From assembly GCA_026770705.1 (NCBI GenBank), contig JANJGN010000052.1:1054001-1118000 (forward strand): a DNA stretch of 64,000 nucleotides, in the 5' to 3' direction. The position numbers and the translations under genes are program-made. Below the pieces are notes generated by a model. The model was given only the letters and a program-made list of their open reading frames with translations. It searched no databases and was not told where the DNA came from. Source of the DNA: Isurus oxyrinchus (lineage: Eukaryota). Positions 8,295-13,740 of this stretch are shown here, piece by piece (positions within the stretch are counted from its first letter, which is position 1; each line of letters opens with the position of its first letter).

Positions 8295-8411
8295 CTAATA
8301 TCTACAGCAGAGACCACAAGTCTCATTTGATTCTCTCCAATTACAGCAGTTACAGCAGAATCTGCAGAGCTGCTGTCTGCCCATTCTCTTCTGGCGCTGC
8401 AGCAAGGAGCC
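8295..8411 (-). CDS. HAMP: Hepcidin exon 3: furin site + mature peptide
   Basis: Acceptor tgcttttccAG. Phase 0 reads GSLLQRQKR|MGRQQLCRFCCNCCNWRESNETCGLCCRY*. An RxKR furin motif precedes the hepcidin 8-Cys pattern C-x2-CC-x-CC-x(n)-C-G-x-CC. Confidence 0.93.
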   Translation of the reverse strand, partial: GSLLQRQKRMGRQQLCRFCCNCCNWRESNETCGLCCRY

Positions 8412-8494
8412 CTGGAAAAGCAGGAGCACAATAGGTGAGAACATTCCGGAAAGAAAGAAGGCATCATTTCAATCAGGCGCGTCATTGGAAGGAG

Positions 8495-8880
8495 GATGGC
8501 GCATTTCTATAGCGCCTTTCCCCTCCTCAGGATGGCCCAAAGTGTTCCACAGCTGAAGGAAGGACTTTTTCTGAAGTGGGCTCACCGCTGTAATGTAGGA
8601 AACGCAGCAGGCAATTCACGCACAGCAAGATCCCACAAACAGAAATGTGATAATGGCCCCGATTTTCAGTTTTTTACCAATGTCAGTTGAGGGATAAATG
8701 TTTGCCCCAGGAAAGTGGACATAACTCCACCCATCCAGCCCGCACCACCCCCTCCACACATACCCCCCAACTCCTGACGCACTTCATCTAAATTGTGGCC
8801 ATGGAATCCTCTATATCCACCTGAGAGGGCAGATTGGTTGCCCCAGTTTAATGTCTCATCTGAAAGACAGCGCCTTCAAC
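8495..8880 (-). mobile_element. Deu-domain (SacSINE1/AmnSINE-like) SINE; related copies at ~9320-9490, 10895-11200, 28270-28660
   Basis: Contains CACAGCAAGATCCCACAAACAG, GAGGGATAAAT and CCACCTGAGAGGGCAGA, and runs directly into the 33-bp minisatellite. Confidence 0.65.
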
Positions 8881-9210
8881 AGTGCAGCACCCCCTCAGTA
8901 CTGACCCTCCGACTGTGCAGCACTCCCTCAGTACTGACTCTGACAATGCAGCACATCCTCAGTACTGACCCTCCAACAGTGCAGCACTCCCTCAAGACTG
9001 ACCCTCTGACAATGCAACACTCCCTCAGTACTGACCCTCCGACTGTGCATCCCCCCGCCGGTACTGACCCTTCGACAGTGCAACACTCCCTCAAGACTGA
9101 CCCTCTGACAATGCAGCACTCCCTCAGTACTAACCCTCTGACAATGCAGCACTCCCTCAGTACTGACCCTCTGACAATGCAGCACACCCTCAATACTGAC
9201 CCTCCGATAG
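8878..9210. repeat. 33-bp minisatellite (hepcidin intron 2)
   Basis: Tandem CAGTGCAGCACTCCCTCAGTACTGACCCTCTGA units. Confidence 0.95.
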
Positions 9211-10740
9211 CTCGGTCATTCCTCAATTACGCCTGGTGGTCCTTTTAACTCAGAGCTGAGAGTTGCAGAGAATCGAGCAGACACCCTGAACTGACACTTG
9301 CAGTGCAAGTACTGGGAGCGCGCTGGTCATTATCATGCTGCTGTCTGTGGGATCTTACAGTGCGCCAATGGCTGATTCTTTTCCCACATTACATCAGTGA
9401 CCTCACATGAAAGAAAAAAGCACTTGATTGTCTGCGAAACACTTTGGGACGTCCTGATGTGTTGGAAGGCGCTAGAGAAATGCAAGTCCTCTTTGTCTTT
9501 CACTCGATCCTCTAAGGTGTCTGTTGATTAACCAGCCTCTCGGTGTATGATGTAGGCCTGGTTATAAACAGTTAGAAGGATCAAATATCAAAAGTGCTTT
9601 GGCTGACAGTCAAACCGATTGTGCATTCGGAGAGATTAGATATGGTCTGCACACAATGACTCCAGTCTCTGGCACTGAATGCCGCCTGGGGTCTCCCTTC
9701 CACATAACAATCACAACTTGCATTTACACAGCGCCTCTGACATTGCAAAATGTCCCAGCCCACATTACCGGAGCGTAAATCAGAGAGAAGTCTAACACTG
9801 AGTCACATATGGAGATATTAGGGTTAGGTGACCAAAAGCTTGGTCAAAGATGTCAGTTTTTAAGGAACGTCTTAAAGGAGAGAGAGAGAGAGAGGCAGAG
9901 AGGTTAAGGGAGGGTATTCCGGAGCTCAGGGCCCCAGGCAGCTGAAGGCACGGCCACCAATGGTGGAGCGATGGGAATCAGGGGGTCCCGGGAGATGCAG
10001 TAATGTCAGAGATTTTGGAGGAACATCGGGACCGGAGGAGGTGTTCTCCTGCTCCATATCTCTCTCTCTCTTCCTCTCATCCACTCCTCCTCTCCCTGTC
10101 TCTCTCTCTCCTACTCTTCCTCTCAATTGCCCTCTCTCCCAATCTTTCTCTCCTCTCTCCCTTTTCCTGTCTCTCTCCCTCTCTCTCCCCTGTCTCCTTC
10201 TCCCACTCTGTATCTCTCCCTCTCTCACACTATTTTTGTACCTTTCGCTCACTCTGTAACTCTCCCTTTCCTGTTAATTTCTCTCTCTTGGACAATCTCT
10301 CTTCCCTTTTCACTTTCCCTCACTCTGCATCTCTTCTTTAATTTCTCCCTCTGTCACTCTCTCCCACCTATGTTCTTTCCCTTTCACCCCTCCCCGTCCC
10401 ACTCTCTGTCTCTCTCTTCCAATCCCTCCCTCCCCCATTCCATCCCTCTCTCCGACTCTCGACTCCCAGCCTCTCTTTAACCCACTCCCAGGCTGGATCA
10501 GTCTCCCTCTCACTATTCCCGGCGTGGGTTACATTTAAAATTCCTGTGGGGATATGTTCACTTCCTTGGAATTGCCTCTTCCCAGCTTTGCAAAAAAAGG
10601 GGGGGGGGGCTCGATTTCAAACATGCCTCCTGAGTATAACCGAGACAGACTGCCACTGAAATCAGCTTGAAATCAGAAAACTTTCTGTGGAAGAAACGAG
10701 CAGGGAGAAACCTTAAAATAAGGAATGAATTTCCACCTAC

Positions 10741-10797
10741 CGTGTCCGGGGAATCCACAGATTTCTCAATCGTCGAAGAACCTAAAGCAGTGTCAAC
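10741..10797 (-). CDS. HAMP: Hepcidin exon 2 (pro-region)
   Basis: tttctttttgcAG|GTT...ACG|GTaggt. The exon is 57 nt, phase 0-0, and reads VDTALGSSTIEKSVDSPDT; the other two frames have stops. Size and phase fit the short acidic HAMP exon 2. Confidence 0.8.
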
Positions 10798-11650: not shown

Positions 11651-11709
11651 GGAGTGTTGACCGACGTTATGGGACTGAATTCCCTGGAGTGAGACTCAGA
11701 CCAGAGATT

Positions 11710-13160
11710 TAGGTAGGGTTGTTCCGGCTGGAGGAGGTTACAGAGATAGGGAGGGTTGTAGAGGCTGGAGGAGATAACAGAGATAGGGAGGGTTCTAGAC
11801 GCTGCAGGAGGTTACAGAGATAGGGAGGGTTGTAGGGGCTGTAGGAGGTTACAGAGATAGGGAGGTGAGTAGGGGCTGTAGGAGGTTAAAGAGATGGGGG
11901 GGTTGTGGGGGCTGGAGGAGGTTACAGAGGTAGGGAGGGTTGTAGAGGCTGGAGGAGGTTACCAAAATAGATACTGTTGTAGGGGCCACAGTAGGTTACA
12001 GAGATAGGGAGAGTTATAGTGTGGAGAGGACGTTATAGAGTTCATGAGCATTGTAGGGGCTGGAGGAGGTTACAGTGATTCTGAGGGTCGTGGGGCCTGG
12101 AGGAGGTTACAGAGATAGGGAGGGTTGTAGGGTCTGGAGGAGGTTACAGAGATAGGGAGGGTTGTAGGGTCTGGAGCAGGTTACAGAGATAGGGAGGGTT
12201 GTAGGGTCTAGAGGAGGTTACAGTGATCATGAGGGTTGTGGGGCCTGGGGGAGGTTACAGAGATAGGTAGGGTTGTAGGTGCTGGAGGAGGTTACAGAGA
12301 TAGGGAGGGTTGTAGGATCTGGAGGAGGTTACAGTGATCGTGAGGGTTGTGGGGCCTGGGGGAGGTTACAGAGATAGGGAGTGTTGTGGGGACTGTAGGA
12401 GGTTACATAGATAGGGAGGGTTGTCGGGTCTGGAGGAGGTTACAGAGATAGGGAGGGTTATAGGGACTGGAGGAGGTTACAGAGATAGGGAGGGTTGTAG
12501 AGACTGTAGGATGTTACAGAGATAGGGATTGTTGTAGGGGCTGGAGGATGTTACAGAGATAGGGAGGGTTGTAGGGGCTGGAGGAGGTTACAGAGATAGG
12601 GAGGGTTGTAGGGGCTGGAGGAGGTTACAGAGATAGGGAGGGTTGTACGGGCTGGAGGAGGTTACAGAGATAGGGAGGGTTGTAGGGGCTGGAGGAAGTT
12701 ACAGAGATAGGGAGGGTTGTAGGGGCTGGAGGAGGTTACAGAGATAGGGAGGGGTGTAGGGGCTGGAGGAGGTTACAGAGATAGGGAGGGTTGTAAGGCC
12801 TGGTGGAGGTTACAGAGATAGGGAGGGTTGTAGGGGCTGGAGGAGTTTACAGAGATAGGGAGGGGTGTAGGGGCTGGAGGAGGTTACAGAGATAGGGAGG
12901 GTTGTAGGGCCTGGTGGAGGTTACAGAGATAGCGAGGGTTGTAGGGGCTGGAGGAGTTTACAGAGATAGGGAGGGTTGTACGGGCTGGAGGAGGTTACAG
13001 AGATAGGGAGGGTTGTAGGGGCTGGAGGAGGTTACAGAGATAGCGAGGGTTGTAGGGGCTGGAGGAGTTTACAGAGATAGGGAGGGTTGTACGGGCTGGA
13101 GGAGGTTACAGAGATAGGGAGGGTTGTACGGGCTGGAGGAGGTTACAGAGATAGGGAGTC
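11710..13160 (+). repeat. 37-bp G-rich minisatellite GGAGGAGGTTACAGAGATAGGGAGGGTTGTAGGGGCT
   Basis: About 1.45 kb of tandem units within hepcidin intron 1. Confidence 0.95.
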
Positions 13161-13360
13161 GCTGAGGAGGGATTGAAAACAAGAATGAGAATTTCAGGGG
13201 AAACGACAGAAGGAAATGATGTTAAATTCATAGAGGGCGACAATATTAAAGGCACGAACATAATAATATCAAACTGCGGAAGAGACCAGTCTATCTGGGT
13301 GGTAGACGTAGAGTCATGTGCAAGAAACACCTCACCCAGAGGGACATCTCTTAGCTTAAC

Positions 13361-13452
13361 CTCGACAAGGAGAAGAAGTGACTCAGCTGCAGGGAGAGCA
13401 GCAAAGTCAGAGTGAACAAGACAAGTCGCCATTTCATCTGGGAGCTTCCCAT
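13361..13452 (-). CDS. HAMP: Hepcidin exon 1 (signal peptide), apparently 1 nt out of frame with exon 2
   Basis: The ATG at 13452 gives MGSSQMKWRLVLFTLTLLLSLQLSHFFSLS (basic n-region + hydrophobic core), with donor AG|GTtaag at 13360. 92 nt is phase 2, but exon 2 needs phase 0. The ATG at 13432 is in frame with exon 2 (MATCLVHSDFAALPAAESLLLLVE) but lacks a typical h-region. Confidence 0.7.
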
Positions 13453-13521
13453 CTCTGCCTGTCTCTTCTGATCTTCTGGCTCTGCTTTGATGCTTTGGTT
13501 TGTAACTAGAGGAGCTTCCTG

Positions 13522-13740
13522 CTCTTATACCTGAAACACTTGAAGGGGACAGCCGCGGGTGGGTAGCTGTGTGGTATCACACCCATTTCTGGATATTGCA
13601 GTGTCGATGTTCCCTGTCCCACTGGCCTGGGACCAGCAGTAAGGTCACTGGGACATTGACTGTCTGGCGCCGAGAACTATCAGTCCCTCCGCAACGCCCT
13701 TCACCTTGTGCAAATATGTGTTCATATTGATGCAACACAA
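13522..13740 (-). promoter_or_regulatory. Hepcidin proximal promoter: TATA, BMP/SMAD element, STAT-like and C/EBP-like sites
   Basis: TATAAGAG at 13529-13522; GGCGCC at 13666-13671 abutting GTCT/AGAC (13662-13665); TTTCTGGAT at 13586-13594 (1 mismatch to TT-N5-AA); TTGTGCAA at 13706-13713; TGATGCAA at 13728-13735. Confidence 0.65.

What the first reader, a model, noticed from the sequence alone, without database searches (positions are those of the whole stretch)
8295..13740. A hidden three-exon hepcidin gene embedded in a Siglec cluster of a probable cartilaginous fish
Seen: a signal exon, a 57-nt pro-exon and a last exon with RQKR plus an 8-Cys peptide, all with canonical splice sites. None appears as hepcidin in the ORF track. 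Established: HAMP has this three-exon layout and lies beside the Siglec genes MAG and CD22 in mammals (USF2-HAMP-MAG-CD22). Inference: the HAMP-Siglec linkage is ancient. Small exons in repeat-swollen introns (2.3 and 2.6 kb) make the gene easy to miss in annotation. I cannot verify whether this copy is already described.
Basis: partly seen in the sequence, partly recalled or inferred. Interest (0 to 1): 0.88.

Follow-up and report, generated by a model that had tools for sequence, protein, structure and literature searches.

The report
Shark hepcidin copy with flawed splice
This is a real three-exon gene copy for hepcidin, the small cysteine-rich liver peptide of iron control and defence. It lies among Siglec immune-receptor genes in a shark genome, is one of many copies of a divergent long-loop type, and has a changed letter at its first splice site that may disable it.

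Summary
The gene is real and lies on the minus strand. Its last exon (8411-8298) encodes an RQKR cleavage site and a 29-residue, 8-cysteine peptide that passes Pfam's Hepcidin threshold (31.6 bits against 27). An RNA-like run of the same species holds contigs that join exon 3 to the 57-nt exon 2 (10797-10741) across a canonical GT..AG intron. They also join exon 2 to exon 1, at very high depth.

The claim "all canonical splice sites" fails at intron 1. The only GT (13360-13359) leaves exon 1 one base short and gives a stop in exon 2. The in-frame join seen in RNA ends exon 1 at 13360, so on this DNA the intron would begin TT. Two related species read AAG|GTAAG at this site; a third shares the TT, so it is not an assembly slip.

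The dominant transcribed copy in that run differs from the window at every informative intron site. This copy is therefore probably an impaired member of a multi-copy family. Constitutive TT-AG splicing is the less likely alternative.

The flanking exons are Siglec-type (best matches MAG and other Siglecs). Transposon relatives point to sharks. The peptide lacks the ferroportin-type N-terminus and has a doubled loop.

The scan has noted the same gene type at many other places in this genome. The case is of moderate interest.

The parts
13662..13671 (-). GGCGCC followed directly by AGAC, 210-219 nt upstream of the ATG. This is a possible BMP/SMAD-type element, found by motif match only.
   Evidence: Regex scan. 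The reads laid stopped at 13600, so conservation here was not tested.
13523..13529 (-). TATA-like box (TATAAGA), about 75 nt upstream of the ATG.
   Evidence: Read directly. The transcription start is not defined, because contigs cannot show starts.
13360..13452 (-). Exon 1 coding part as found in RNA: 93 nt, 31 codons. It has a charged n-region around KWR and then a hydrophobic core, and ends SLSR.
   Evidence: Kyte-Doolittle 9-mer maximum 2.73. The joint 10797|13360 is seen in 9 X1 contigs at depth about 10,270.
13355..13361 (-). Intron-1 donor region, reading G-G-T-T-A-A-G. The only GT (13360-13359) gives a 92-nt exon and a frameshift. The ancestral cut site after 13360 is now followed by TT.
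   Evidence: Organisms C and D read A at 13361 and G at 13359 on this strand, that is AAG|GTAAG. Organism B reads the same as the window (table 3).
10798..13359 (-). Intron 1 as defined by the RNA joint (2,562 nt). It holds a 37-bp x 39 minisatellite (11710-13158) and a 33-bp array (11212-11647).
   Evidence: (joint, 'skips 2562, ends CT..AA' on the + strand).
10741..10797 (-). Exon 2: 57 nt, 19 codons of the pro-region, phase 0 to 0.
   Evidence: Both flanking joints are seen in X1. C and D differ from the window at 10786, a synonymous change (GCT to GCG).
8412..10740 (-). Intron 2 (2,329 nt), canonical GT..AG. It holds a 33-bp array (8879-9207).
   Evidence: joint 8410/8411|10740/10741 with ends CT..AC on the + strand, in 9 contigs plus 1 contig at depth 13,928. 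Also.
8385..8396 (-). RQKR proprotein-convertase (furin-type) site.
   Evidence: Translation. It lies directly before the mature peptide, as in the hepcidin precursors I recall (human, from my own knowledge).
8298..8384 (-). Mature 29-aa peptide. Cys are at positions 7, 10, 11, 13, 14, 23, 26 and 27. The loop has 8 residues and carries an N-E-T sequon. The N-terminus reads MGRQQL.
   Evidence: The first five Cys are spaced as in human hepcidin-25. CRFCCNCC is identical to bass hepcidin (PDB 1S6W).
8295..8411 (-). Exon 3 coding part plus the stop codon.
   Evidence: X1 depth is 4e5 to 7e5 over this exon and the 3'UTR.
8046..8294 (-). 3'UTR, at least this far; the end is not defined. No AATAAA or ATTAAA is seen.
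   Evidence: (depth, and a contig that diverges at 8046). All four runs carry an extra A after 8233 relative to the window.
19660..20064 (-). Nearest upstream neighbour: a leader plus a Siglec-like V-set exon. The sialic-acid arginine position reads Gln.
   Evidence: V-set 25.1 bits, just under the cut-off of 26. (sialoadhesin 1.3e-10, MAG 2e-9; the alignment puts ...YYTQ against ...YNFR).
37676..63129 (-). Tandem Siglec-type gene units on the same strand. V-set exons: 43550-44017, 51071-51343 (partial), 62662-63129. C2-set exons: 42280-42633, 49622-50017, 61024-61413. Ig exons: 37676-37987, 57792-58262.
   Evidence: V-set, Ig_CD22, C2-set_2, Ig_3. (MAG 2.8e-13, Siglec-5/7/8, CD33, sialoadhesin; the YFFR arginine motif is kept).

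Best explanation
This is a genuine hepcidin-family gene copy on the minus strand of a shark genome, downstream of tandem Siglec-type genes.

By its parts it should encode a precursor of a signal peptide, a short pro-region, an RQKR convertase site and a 29-aa, four-disulphide peptide. That peptide is a divergent long-loop type without the ferroportin-type N-terminus. It would more likely be a secreted defence peptide, like teleost Hamp2, than the iron hormone.

Exons of identical sequence are spliced and expressed at very high level in the species. In this copy, however, the first base of intron 1 is T instead of the ancestral G. The only GT lies one base upstream. Normal splicing would therefore drop one base, shift the frame and stop in exon 2.

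The most likely reading is that this copy, or this haplotype, is a young, otherwise undamaged, impaired member of a multi-copy family. The abundant in-frame mRNA would then come from sister copies or alleles with an intact donor.

Shown here: family membership, exon borders, the joins in RNA, and that the T is real. Inferred: secretion, cleavage, the disulphides, the function, and which copy yields the mRNA.
For: - Pfam Hepcidin scores 31.6 bits against a cut-off of 27.
- The exon-3 peptide aligns to bass and human hepcidin in the PDB with all Cys matched.
- The Cys pattern is unique in the window and absent from 200 shuffles.
- X1 depth is 2e5 to 7e5 on the exons against about 650-1,240 on the introns. 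X1 has the joints 8411|10741 (GT..AG) and 10797|13360.
- With the GT donor the frame reads R-L-T-L-L-stop.
- Organisms C and D carry AAG|GTAAG at the same place, with a 93-nt exon 1. So G at +1 is ancestral (table 3, rows 13359 and 13361).
- The independent contig of organism B has the same letters as the window at both places. So the T is not an assembly slip.
- At every intron site where X1 differs from the window, 100% of X1 depth carries the other letter (8427, 8579, 8841, 9359, 9389, 9594, 9643, 9679, 10610, 11800, 11805). This is about 1.4% difference over 1,873 nt. All X1 contigs also carry the extra A after 8233. The dominant transcribed copy or allele is therefore not this one.
- Nine different contigs carry the exon 1-2 joint, and there are minor variants (CGG or TGG in place of AGG). 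This points to several expressed copies.
- Unchecked scan notes report the same gene type at many places in this genome, one of them called intact.
Against: - No joint that uses the GT donor (10797|13361) is among the listed joints of X1. The window's copy therefore shows no transcript of its own kind. Nonsense-mediated decay, and contigs dropping rare variants, could hide one.
- Apart from the donor, nothing else in the copy is damaged. The TT is shared with organism B and, by unchecked notes, with two other copies. That would also fit a donor that still works.
- The donor sequence of the copy that yields the mRNA was not seen. X1 has no coverage at 13359.
- X1 is only guessed to be RNA by the tool. 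The depth contrast and the intron-exact joints are my grounds for treating it as RNA.
Confidence: 0.6

Rival explanations
1. The copy is functional. The spliceosome still cuts at the ancestral place, after 13360, although the intron now begins TT. This would be a constitutive U2-like TT-AG intron, so the copy itself yields the abundant in-frame mRNA.
For: - The RNA joint is exactly the one that a cut after 13360 gives. No GT-donor joint is listed.
- The +2 to +5 letters (TAAG) and the -1 G of the ancestral site are kept.
- The TT is shared by organism B, with the exons otherwise intact.
- Unchecked notes flag the same one-letter change in two other copies.
- There is a precedent: human ETV1 has a constitutive TT-AG junction, and 184 U2/U12-like non-canonical sites were found in human (PMC4176328).
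Against: - G at +1 is almost invariant in U2 introns (my own knowledge).
- The dominant X1 pre-mRNA is not the window's haplotype at any informative site.
- An intact sister copy would explain the mRNA without unusual splicing.
Confidence: 0.17
2. The T at 13359 is an error or a rare null allele of the assembled haplotype. The normal gene at this very locus has GT and is the expressed gene.
For: - The window is the odd one out against all four runs at 8233, 8427 and 8579.
- The best DNA runs of organism A hold only 0.58-0.75 of the sampled words of 8130-8420.
Against: An independent contig of run X10 (organism B, depth 4.5, 471 nt, no gaps) has the window's letters at 13359 and 13361. Substitution errors of this kind are rare in modern assemblies (my own knowledge).
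Confidence: 0.08
3. With the GT donor, a leaderless product is made from the third ATG (13432). In that frame exon 1 (72 nt) joins exons 2 and 3 without a stop.
For: The ORF from 13432 is open to the GT donor in phase 0. That ATG has G at -3 and G at +4.
Against: - Two upstream ATGs (13452, in a good context, and 13437) come first.
- The 24-residue start carries D and E and is not a typical signal peptide, so an 8-Cys peptide would not reach the oxidising secretory path.
- No such joint is listed in RNA.
Confidence: 0.03
4. This is the animal's iron-regulatory HAMP orthologue: the ferroportin ligand itself, rather than a defence-type paralogue.
For: - Hepcidin family membership, very high expression and linkage to Siglec genes as in mammals.
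- Six residues precede the first Cys, and the Phe after the first Cys-Arg is kept, as in human hepcidin-25.
- GGCGCC plus AGAC in the promoter.
Against: - The N-terminus MGRQQL lacks the His3 and aromatic-4 of the ferroportin-binding end.
- The loop is doubled and carries a glycosylation sequon.
- X1 holds another transcript that reads SHLSICMYCC after the same cleavage site. That is close to sea bass Hamp1 (QSHLSLC...), which regulates ferroportin, whereas Hamp2 (...CRFCCNCC...) does not (PMC5665920).
Confidence: 0.1

Closest known systems
Human HAMP / hepcidin-25 (PDB 1M4F, 2KEF)
   Same: Both have three exons, a signal peptide, a pro-region, a basic convertase site, 8 Cys with the first five at positions 7, 10, 11, 13 and 14, very high expression, and Siglec genes as genomic neighbours. 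The human exon layout and the HSA19 gene order are from my own knowledge. PMC4453067 places HAMP and USF2 in the FFAR locus and names MAG as a nearby marker.
   Different: The loop between the Cys pairs has 8 residues here, not 4, and carries an N-E-T sequon. The N-terminus MGRQQL replaces DTHFPI. This gene is multi-copy in its genome, and this copy has T at intron 1 position +1.
Teleost two-type hepcidins: sea bass Hamp1 (iron) and Hamp2 (antimicrobial; PDB 1S6W bass hepcidin)
   Same: The CRFCCNCC core is identical to Hamp2, and the tail CG-x-CCR-aromatic is shared. The species also expresses a Hamp1-like SHLSIC form. This suggests the same division of labour between two types (PMC5665920).
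   Different: The duplication is probably independent of the teleost one; this was not tested by a tree. The loop is three residues longer than in Hamp2. Function is untested.
Mammalian gene block around HAMP on HSA19: USF2-HAMP-MAG-CD22, with the FFAR genes
   Same: A hepcidin gene lies on the same strand as, and next to, MAG/Siglec-type V-set plus C2-set genes.
   Different: USF2, LSR and FFAR were not seen among the ORFs of at least 85 aa in this window (read by eye). The Siglec units are tandemly amplified, and none is shown to be the MAG or CD22 orthologue. Here hepcidin lies downstream of the Siglec units, not upstream of MAG.
Constitutive TT-AG intron of human ETV1 (Parada et al. 2014, PMC4176328)
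   Same: The RNA joint laid on this DNA implies a TT..AG intron within a U2-like context.
   Different: It is not shown that this copy is the source of the RNA. In related species the site is a normal GT.

Membership tests
Hepcidin (Pfam PF06446) | Profile score at or above the curated gathering cut-off | tested here: met
   31.6 bits against 27, E 2e-7, profile positions 24-52 of 53.
Hepcidin (Pfam PF06446) | Eight Cys in the order C-x2-CC-x-CC-loop-C-x2-CC | tested here: met
   Cys at 7, 10, 11, 13, 14, 23, 26 and 27 of the mature peptide. The pattern is found once in the window and in none of 200 shuffles. It aligns to 1S6W and 1M4F.
Hepcidin (Pfam PF06446) | Basic proprotein-convertase site directly before the mature peptide | tested here: met
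   RQKR at 8396-8385.
Hepcidin (Pfam PF06446) | N-terminal signal peptide joined in frame to the pro-region and peptide | tested here: inconclusive
   A hydrophobic core is present in the frame from ATG 13452. The in-frame join exists in RNA. On this DNA it needs a TT donor, and the GT donor gives a stop in exon 2.
Hepcidin (Pfam PF06446) | Three-exon gene with a spliced transcript | tested here: met
   Joints 8411|10741 and 10797|13360 in X1 contigs, with an exon to intron depth ratio of a few hundred-fold. The transcript was not assigned to this copy.
Hepcidin (Pfam PF06446) | Beta-hairpin fold held by four disulphides | tested here: inconclusive
   AlphaFold2 without an alignment gave two helices, pLDDT 74 and pTM 0.40. 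This is unreliable for a small disulphide peptide, so no fold search was made.
Iron-hormone type hepcidin (HAMP / Hamp1) | Ferroportin-binding N-terminus (His3 with an aromatic or hydrophobic neighbour: DTHFPI or QSHLSL) | tested here: not met
   The N-terminus reads MGRQQL. A separate transcript in X1 reads SHLSIC.
Iron-hormone type hepcidin (HAMP / Hamp1) | Binds ferroportin and lowers iron export | not testable with these tools
   Needs a peptide and a ferroportin assay.
Siglec (the neighbouring genes) | N-terminal V-set domain of the CD22/Siglec kind with the sialic-acid arginine | tested here: met
   Ig_CD22 scores 38.1 and 37.7 bits against 27. MAG matches at 2.8e-13, with YFFR aligned to YYFR. 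The V-set exon at 19660-20064 has Gln at that place.
Siglec (the neighbouring genes) | V-set followed by C2-set Ig domains, a transmembrane part and an ITIM or other tail | tested here: inconclusive
   C2-set_2 and Ig_3 exons follow in order. The transmembrane and tail exons were not examined by me.

The most novel reading that the evidence does not exclude
In this shark lineage the long-loop hepcidin genes would be spliced constitutively through a TT-AG first intron. The G-to-T change at +1 would then be tolerated and inherited by several copies and by a sister species. These copies, amplified together with Siglec genes, would make the main liver-secreted, possibly N-glycosylated, defence hepcidin. 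A separate SHLSIC-type gene would keep the iron-hormone role.
Probability: 0.15. Interest if true: 0.55.

Novelty: new member of a known kind. Interest (0 to 1): 0.33.

Why it matters
Hepcidin is the master iron hormone of vertebrates, and its origin is placed 'not before fish' (PMC8235187). The open literature I could search says almost nothing on cartilaginous-fish hepcidin. The one exception is a nurse shark plasma proteome hit that has no orthologue in the whale shark annotation (PMC9207270).

This locus shows three things:
- Sharks carry hepcidin genes next to Siglec genes, as mammals do.
- The family has been amplified and has split into a conventional type and a long-loop type.
- Such tiny exons in repeat-filled introns are easy to miss or to mis-join.

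The donor change is a clean natural test case. Either it marks a freshly disabled copy, or it is a tolerated TT-AG intron. Each single point is modest, and the scan has met the same gene type many times in this genome.

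Tried and rejected
- phmmer of the exon-3 peptide against 1.84 billion representatives gave one hit, a 1,442-aa repeat protein at E 4.6e-4. It was of no use.
- The search for homologous proteins with the exon-3 ORF, at 49 aa and then 57 aa, gave 'no candidate shares three words' both times. This says nothing about relatives.
- The ESM Atlas gave a best score of 0.76 to a plant cluster, so no lead.
- The exact look-up of six ORFs of the window found none in the collection.
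I therefore could not fetch contigs of other species or name the organism.
- AlphaFold2 on the exon-3 peptide alone gave helices at moderate confidence. This is no support for the hairpin, and I made no fold search.
- The bacterial promoter and terminator scan of the 5' flank found nothing, and it is not meaningful for a vertebrate.
- No second hepcidin exon was found in the window by tblastn.
- No AATAAA or ATTAAA was seen in 8000-8294.
- The literature searches for shark or cartilaginous-fish hepcidin and for a siglec-4/hepcidin linkage in fish found nothing specific.
Each exon was handled by reference. The only step across a join was reading the two carry-over bases of exon 1 with the first 16 bases of exon 2, to see the frame.
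- A chance ORF was rejected, and so was a processed retrocopy, because the introns are present.

Full report
**What is in the sequence.**
The gene lies on the minus strand. The last exon is 8411-8298, with the stop at 8297-8295. It follows a pyrimidine-rich tract and a CAG acceptor. It reads a short pro-region end, then RQKR (8396-8385), then a 29-residue peptide with eight cysteines.

This exon alone passes Pfam's curated threshold for Hepcidin: PF06446, 31.6 bits against 27, E 2e-7. It aligns to bass hepcidin (1S6W) and human hepcidin (1M4F) with every cysteine matched. Its CRFCCNCC core is identical to the bass peptide. The hepcidin cysteine pattern occurs once in the six-frame translation of the 64-kb window and never in 200 shuffles.

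Exon 2 is 10797-10741, exactly 57 nt, between a CAG acceptor and a GTAGGT donor. Exon 1 starts at ATG 13452, with G at -3 and G at +4. It reads a charged start followed by a strongly hydrophobic core, with a Kyte-Doolittle 9-mer maximum of 2.73. That is what a signal peptide looks like. A TATAAGA box lies at 13529-13523.

**Transcript evidence.**
One search for sequencing runs and one read-laying run were allowed. Run X1 is coded organism A; the tool only guesses that it is RNA. Its word depth is 2e5 to 7e5 on the three exons and the 3'UTR, against about 650-1,240 on the introns.

X1 contigs skip 8412-10740 (GT..AG on the gene's strand). They also join 10797 to 13360. A depth contrast of a few hundred-fold together with intron-exact joins is what RNA gives. 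So I treat X1 as RNA, from a tissue where this gene type is among the most abundant messages.

They are filled with 33-bp arrays and a 37-bp x 39 minisatellite.

**The flaw.**
Downstream of exon 1 the DNA reads ...TCGAG-GTTAAG.

- The only GT is at 13360-13359. It leaves 92 coding bases, and the frame then runs R-L-T-L-L-stop in exon 2.
- The join found in RNA keeps base 13360. That gives 93 bases and a reading in frame through exons 2 and 3.
- Laid on this DNA, that intron begins TT and ends AG. With the equivalent placement it begins GT and ends CA.

Contigs of two related species (organisms C and D, about 4% different) read A at 13361 and G at 13359 on this strand. That is AAG|GTAAG, a normal donor with a 93-base exon 1. 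The window therefore carries a G-to-T change at intron position +1.

A contig of a third, very close organism (B, about 1% different, 471 nt laid without gaps) has the window's letters at both places. So the T is real and not an assembly slip (table 3). Another first-reader note on this window had seen the missing base (s1-864395). I confirm it and add its origin.

**Which copy makes the mRNA?**
- At every intron site where X1 differs from the window, all of X1's depth carries the other letter. There are eleven such sites, for about 1.4% difference over 1,873 laid intron bases.
- All X1 contigs have an extra A after 8233 in the 3'UTR, as do organisms B, C and D.
- The dominant transcribed copy or allele in X1 is therefore not the window's own haplotype. 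Its donor was not seen, because there is no X1 coverage at 13359.
- Nine different contigs carry the exon 1-2 join. Minor variants of its last codon occur (CGG and TGG beside AGG), which points to several expressed copies.
- The scan's own unchecked notes list the same 29-aa hepcidin at many other places in this genome. One copy 148 kb away is called intact and expressed, and two others are flagged with the same one-letter donor change. I could not read those places.

On this evidence the most likely reading (about 0.6) is that this copy or haplotype is a young, otherwise undamaged, impaired member of a multi-copy family. The in-frame mRNA would then come from sister copies or alleles.

The main rival (about 0.17) is that the TT donor still works. 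The expected one-base-short join is not among the listed joints. The TT is shared with organism B while the exons stay intact. A constitutive TT-AG intron is documented in human ETV1 (PMC4176328). An error or rare null allele at this locus gets about 0.08.

**What the product would be and do.**
Inferred from the parts: secretion through the signal peptide, cleavage after RQKR, and a four-disulphide peptide.

The first five cysteines sit at positions 7, 10, 11, 13 and 14, as in human hepcidin-25. The loop before the sixth cysteine has eight residues instead of four and holds an N-E-T sequon. The N-terminus MGRQQL lacks the His3 and aromatic pair of the ferroportin-binding end.

A loose end of one X1 contig shows a second transcript. 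It shares the codons up to the cleavage site and then reads SHLSICMYCC (table 7, place 8382). This is close to sea bass Hamp1 (QSHLSLC...), which regulates ferroportin. Hamp2, whose CRFCCNCC core the window's peptide shares, does not (PMC5665920).

So this gene type works most like a defence-type second hepcidin, and the SHLSIC type is the better candidate for the iron hormone. This is inference; no function was tested.

**Surroundings.**
All on the same strand and upstream of the hepcidin gene lie tandem Siglec-type units.

- The V-set exons at 43550-44017 and 62662-63129 pass Pfam V-set and Ig_CD22. In the PDB they match MAG (2.8e-13), Siglec-5, -7 and -8, CD33 and sialoadhesin. The YFFR arginine motif is kept.
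- C2-set and Ig exons follow them.
- The nearest neighbour, a leader plus V-set exon at 19660-20064, matches sialoadhesin and MAG but has Gln at the arginine place.

I saw no USF2, LSR or FFAR exon among the ORFs of at least 85 aa, which I read by eye. There is only one hepcidin copy in the window.

A reverse-transcriptase fragment (29802-30422) has its named relatives in Pristiophorus japonicus, Cetorhinus maximus and Mustelus asterias, all Selachii. This supports a shark origin indirectly. Run and organism names were coded.

**Comparison and novelty.**
This is a member of the hepcidin family by every sequence feature tested. It does not meet the defining N-terminal feature of the iron-hormone type.

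The linkage to Siglec genes recalls the mammalian USF2-HAMP-MAG-CD22 block. That gene order is from my own knowledge; PMC4453067 places HAMP and USF2 in the FFAR locus and names MAG as a nearby marker. The linkage fits an old association, but one window without the anchor genes does not prove it.

The open literature I could search is nearly silent on shark hepcidin. PMC8235187 places the hormone's origin in fish. PMC9207270 found hepcidin in nurse shark plasma, with no orthologue in the whale shark annotation. I could not check public annotations.

I class it as a new member of a known kind, of moderate interest. The scan has already met the same gene type repeatedly in this genome.

**Limits.**
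The exons were handled one by one by reference.
- The protein searches that could have fetched shark relatives came back blank for technical reasons.
- Contigs cannot show transcript ends, strand or rare variants.

Noticed in passing
window 8382 (table 7, run X1): One RNA-like contig shares exon 3 up to the codon after RQKR and then reads SHLSICMYCC. This is a second hepcidin type with a conventional Hamp1-like N-terminus. It is expressed in the same species but is not encoded in this window.
   Followed up: partly
window 19660-20064 (-): This leader plus Siglec-like V-set exon lies 6 kb upstream of the hepcidin gene. Its best PDB matches are sialoadhesin and MAG, but the sialic-acid-binding arginine place reads Gln (...YYTQ). 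No C2-set exon was seen between it and the hepcidin gene, and gag-like retroelement ORFs lie at 17753-19595. It may be an orphan or disrupted receptor exon.
   Followed up: partly
window 8233, 8427, 8579: The window differs from all four laid runs, including the run labelled as its own species. It lacks one A after 8233 and has its own letters at 8427 and 8579. The best DNA runs of organism A hold only 0.58-0.75 of the sampled words of 8130-8420. This copy or haplotype may not be represented in the public runs, or the family may be collapsed in their contigs.
   Followed up: partly
window 11710-13158, 8879-9207 and 11212-11647: Intron 1 holds a 37-bp minisatellite of about 39 copies at 87% identity. 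Both introns hold 33-bp arrays of the '...CAGCACTCCCTCAGTACTGACCCTC...' unit. That unit recurs all over the window on both strands and produces many long spurious ORFs.
   Followed up: no
window 9556|10740 (joints): One X1 contig (depth 844) joins the exon 2 donor to a place inside intron 2 (9556), with GT..AG ends. This is a minor alternative acceptor or cryptic exon.
   Followed up: no
window 10740-10753 (table 4, run X17): Organism D lacks 12 bases (3 + 1 + 8) around the end of exon 2 and its donor. If all of them are exonic, the change is in frame (four codons), so the pro-region length varies between species.
   Followed up: no
window 13662-13671 (-): GGCGCC is followed directly by AGAC, 210-219 nt upstream of the ATG. 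It resembles the BMP-responsive element plus SMAD box of mammalian HAMP promoters. It is a motif match only, and it lies outside the stretch on which reads were laid.
   Followed up: partly
window 46814-47116 and 51071-51343 (-): The middle Siglec unit looks damaged. Its V-set ORF covers only the second half of the domain. One C2-type ORF loses the family match after '...SLKHH'. These may be pseudogene units within the tandem array.
   Followed up: no
window 25288-27884 and 37296-37673: There are five runs of N, 1,449 bases in all. One falls inside the Ig exon region of a Siglec unit.
   Followed up: no
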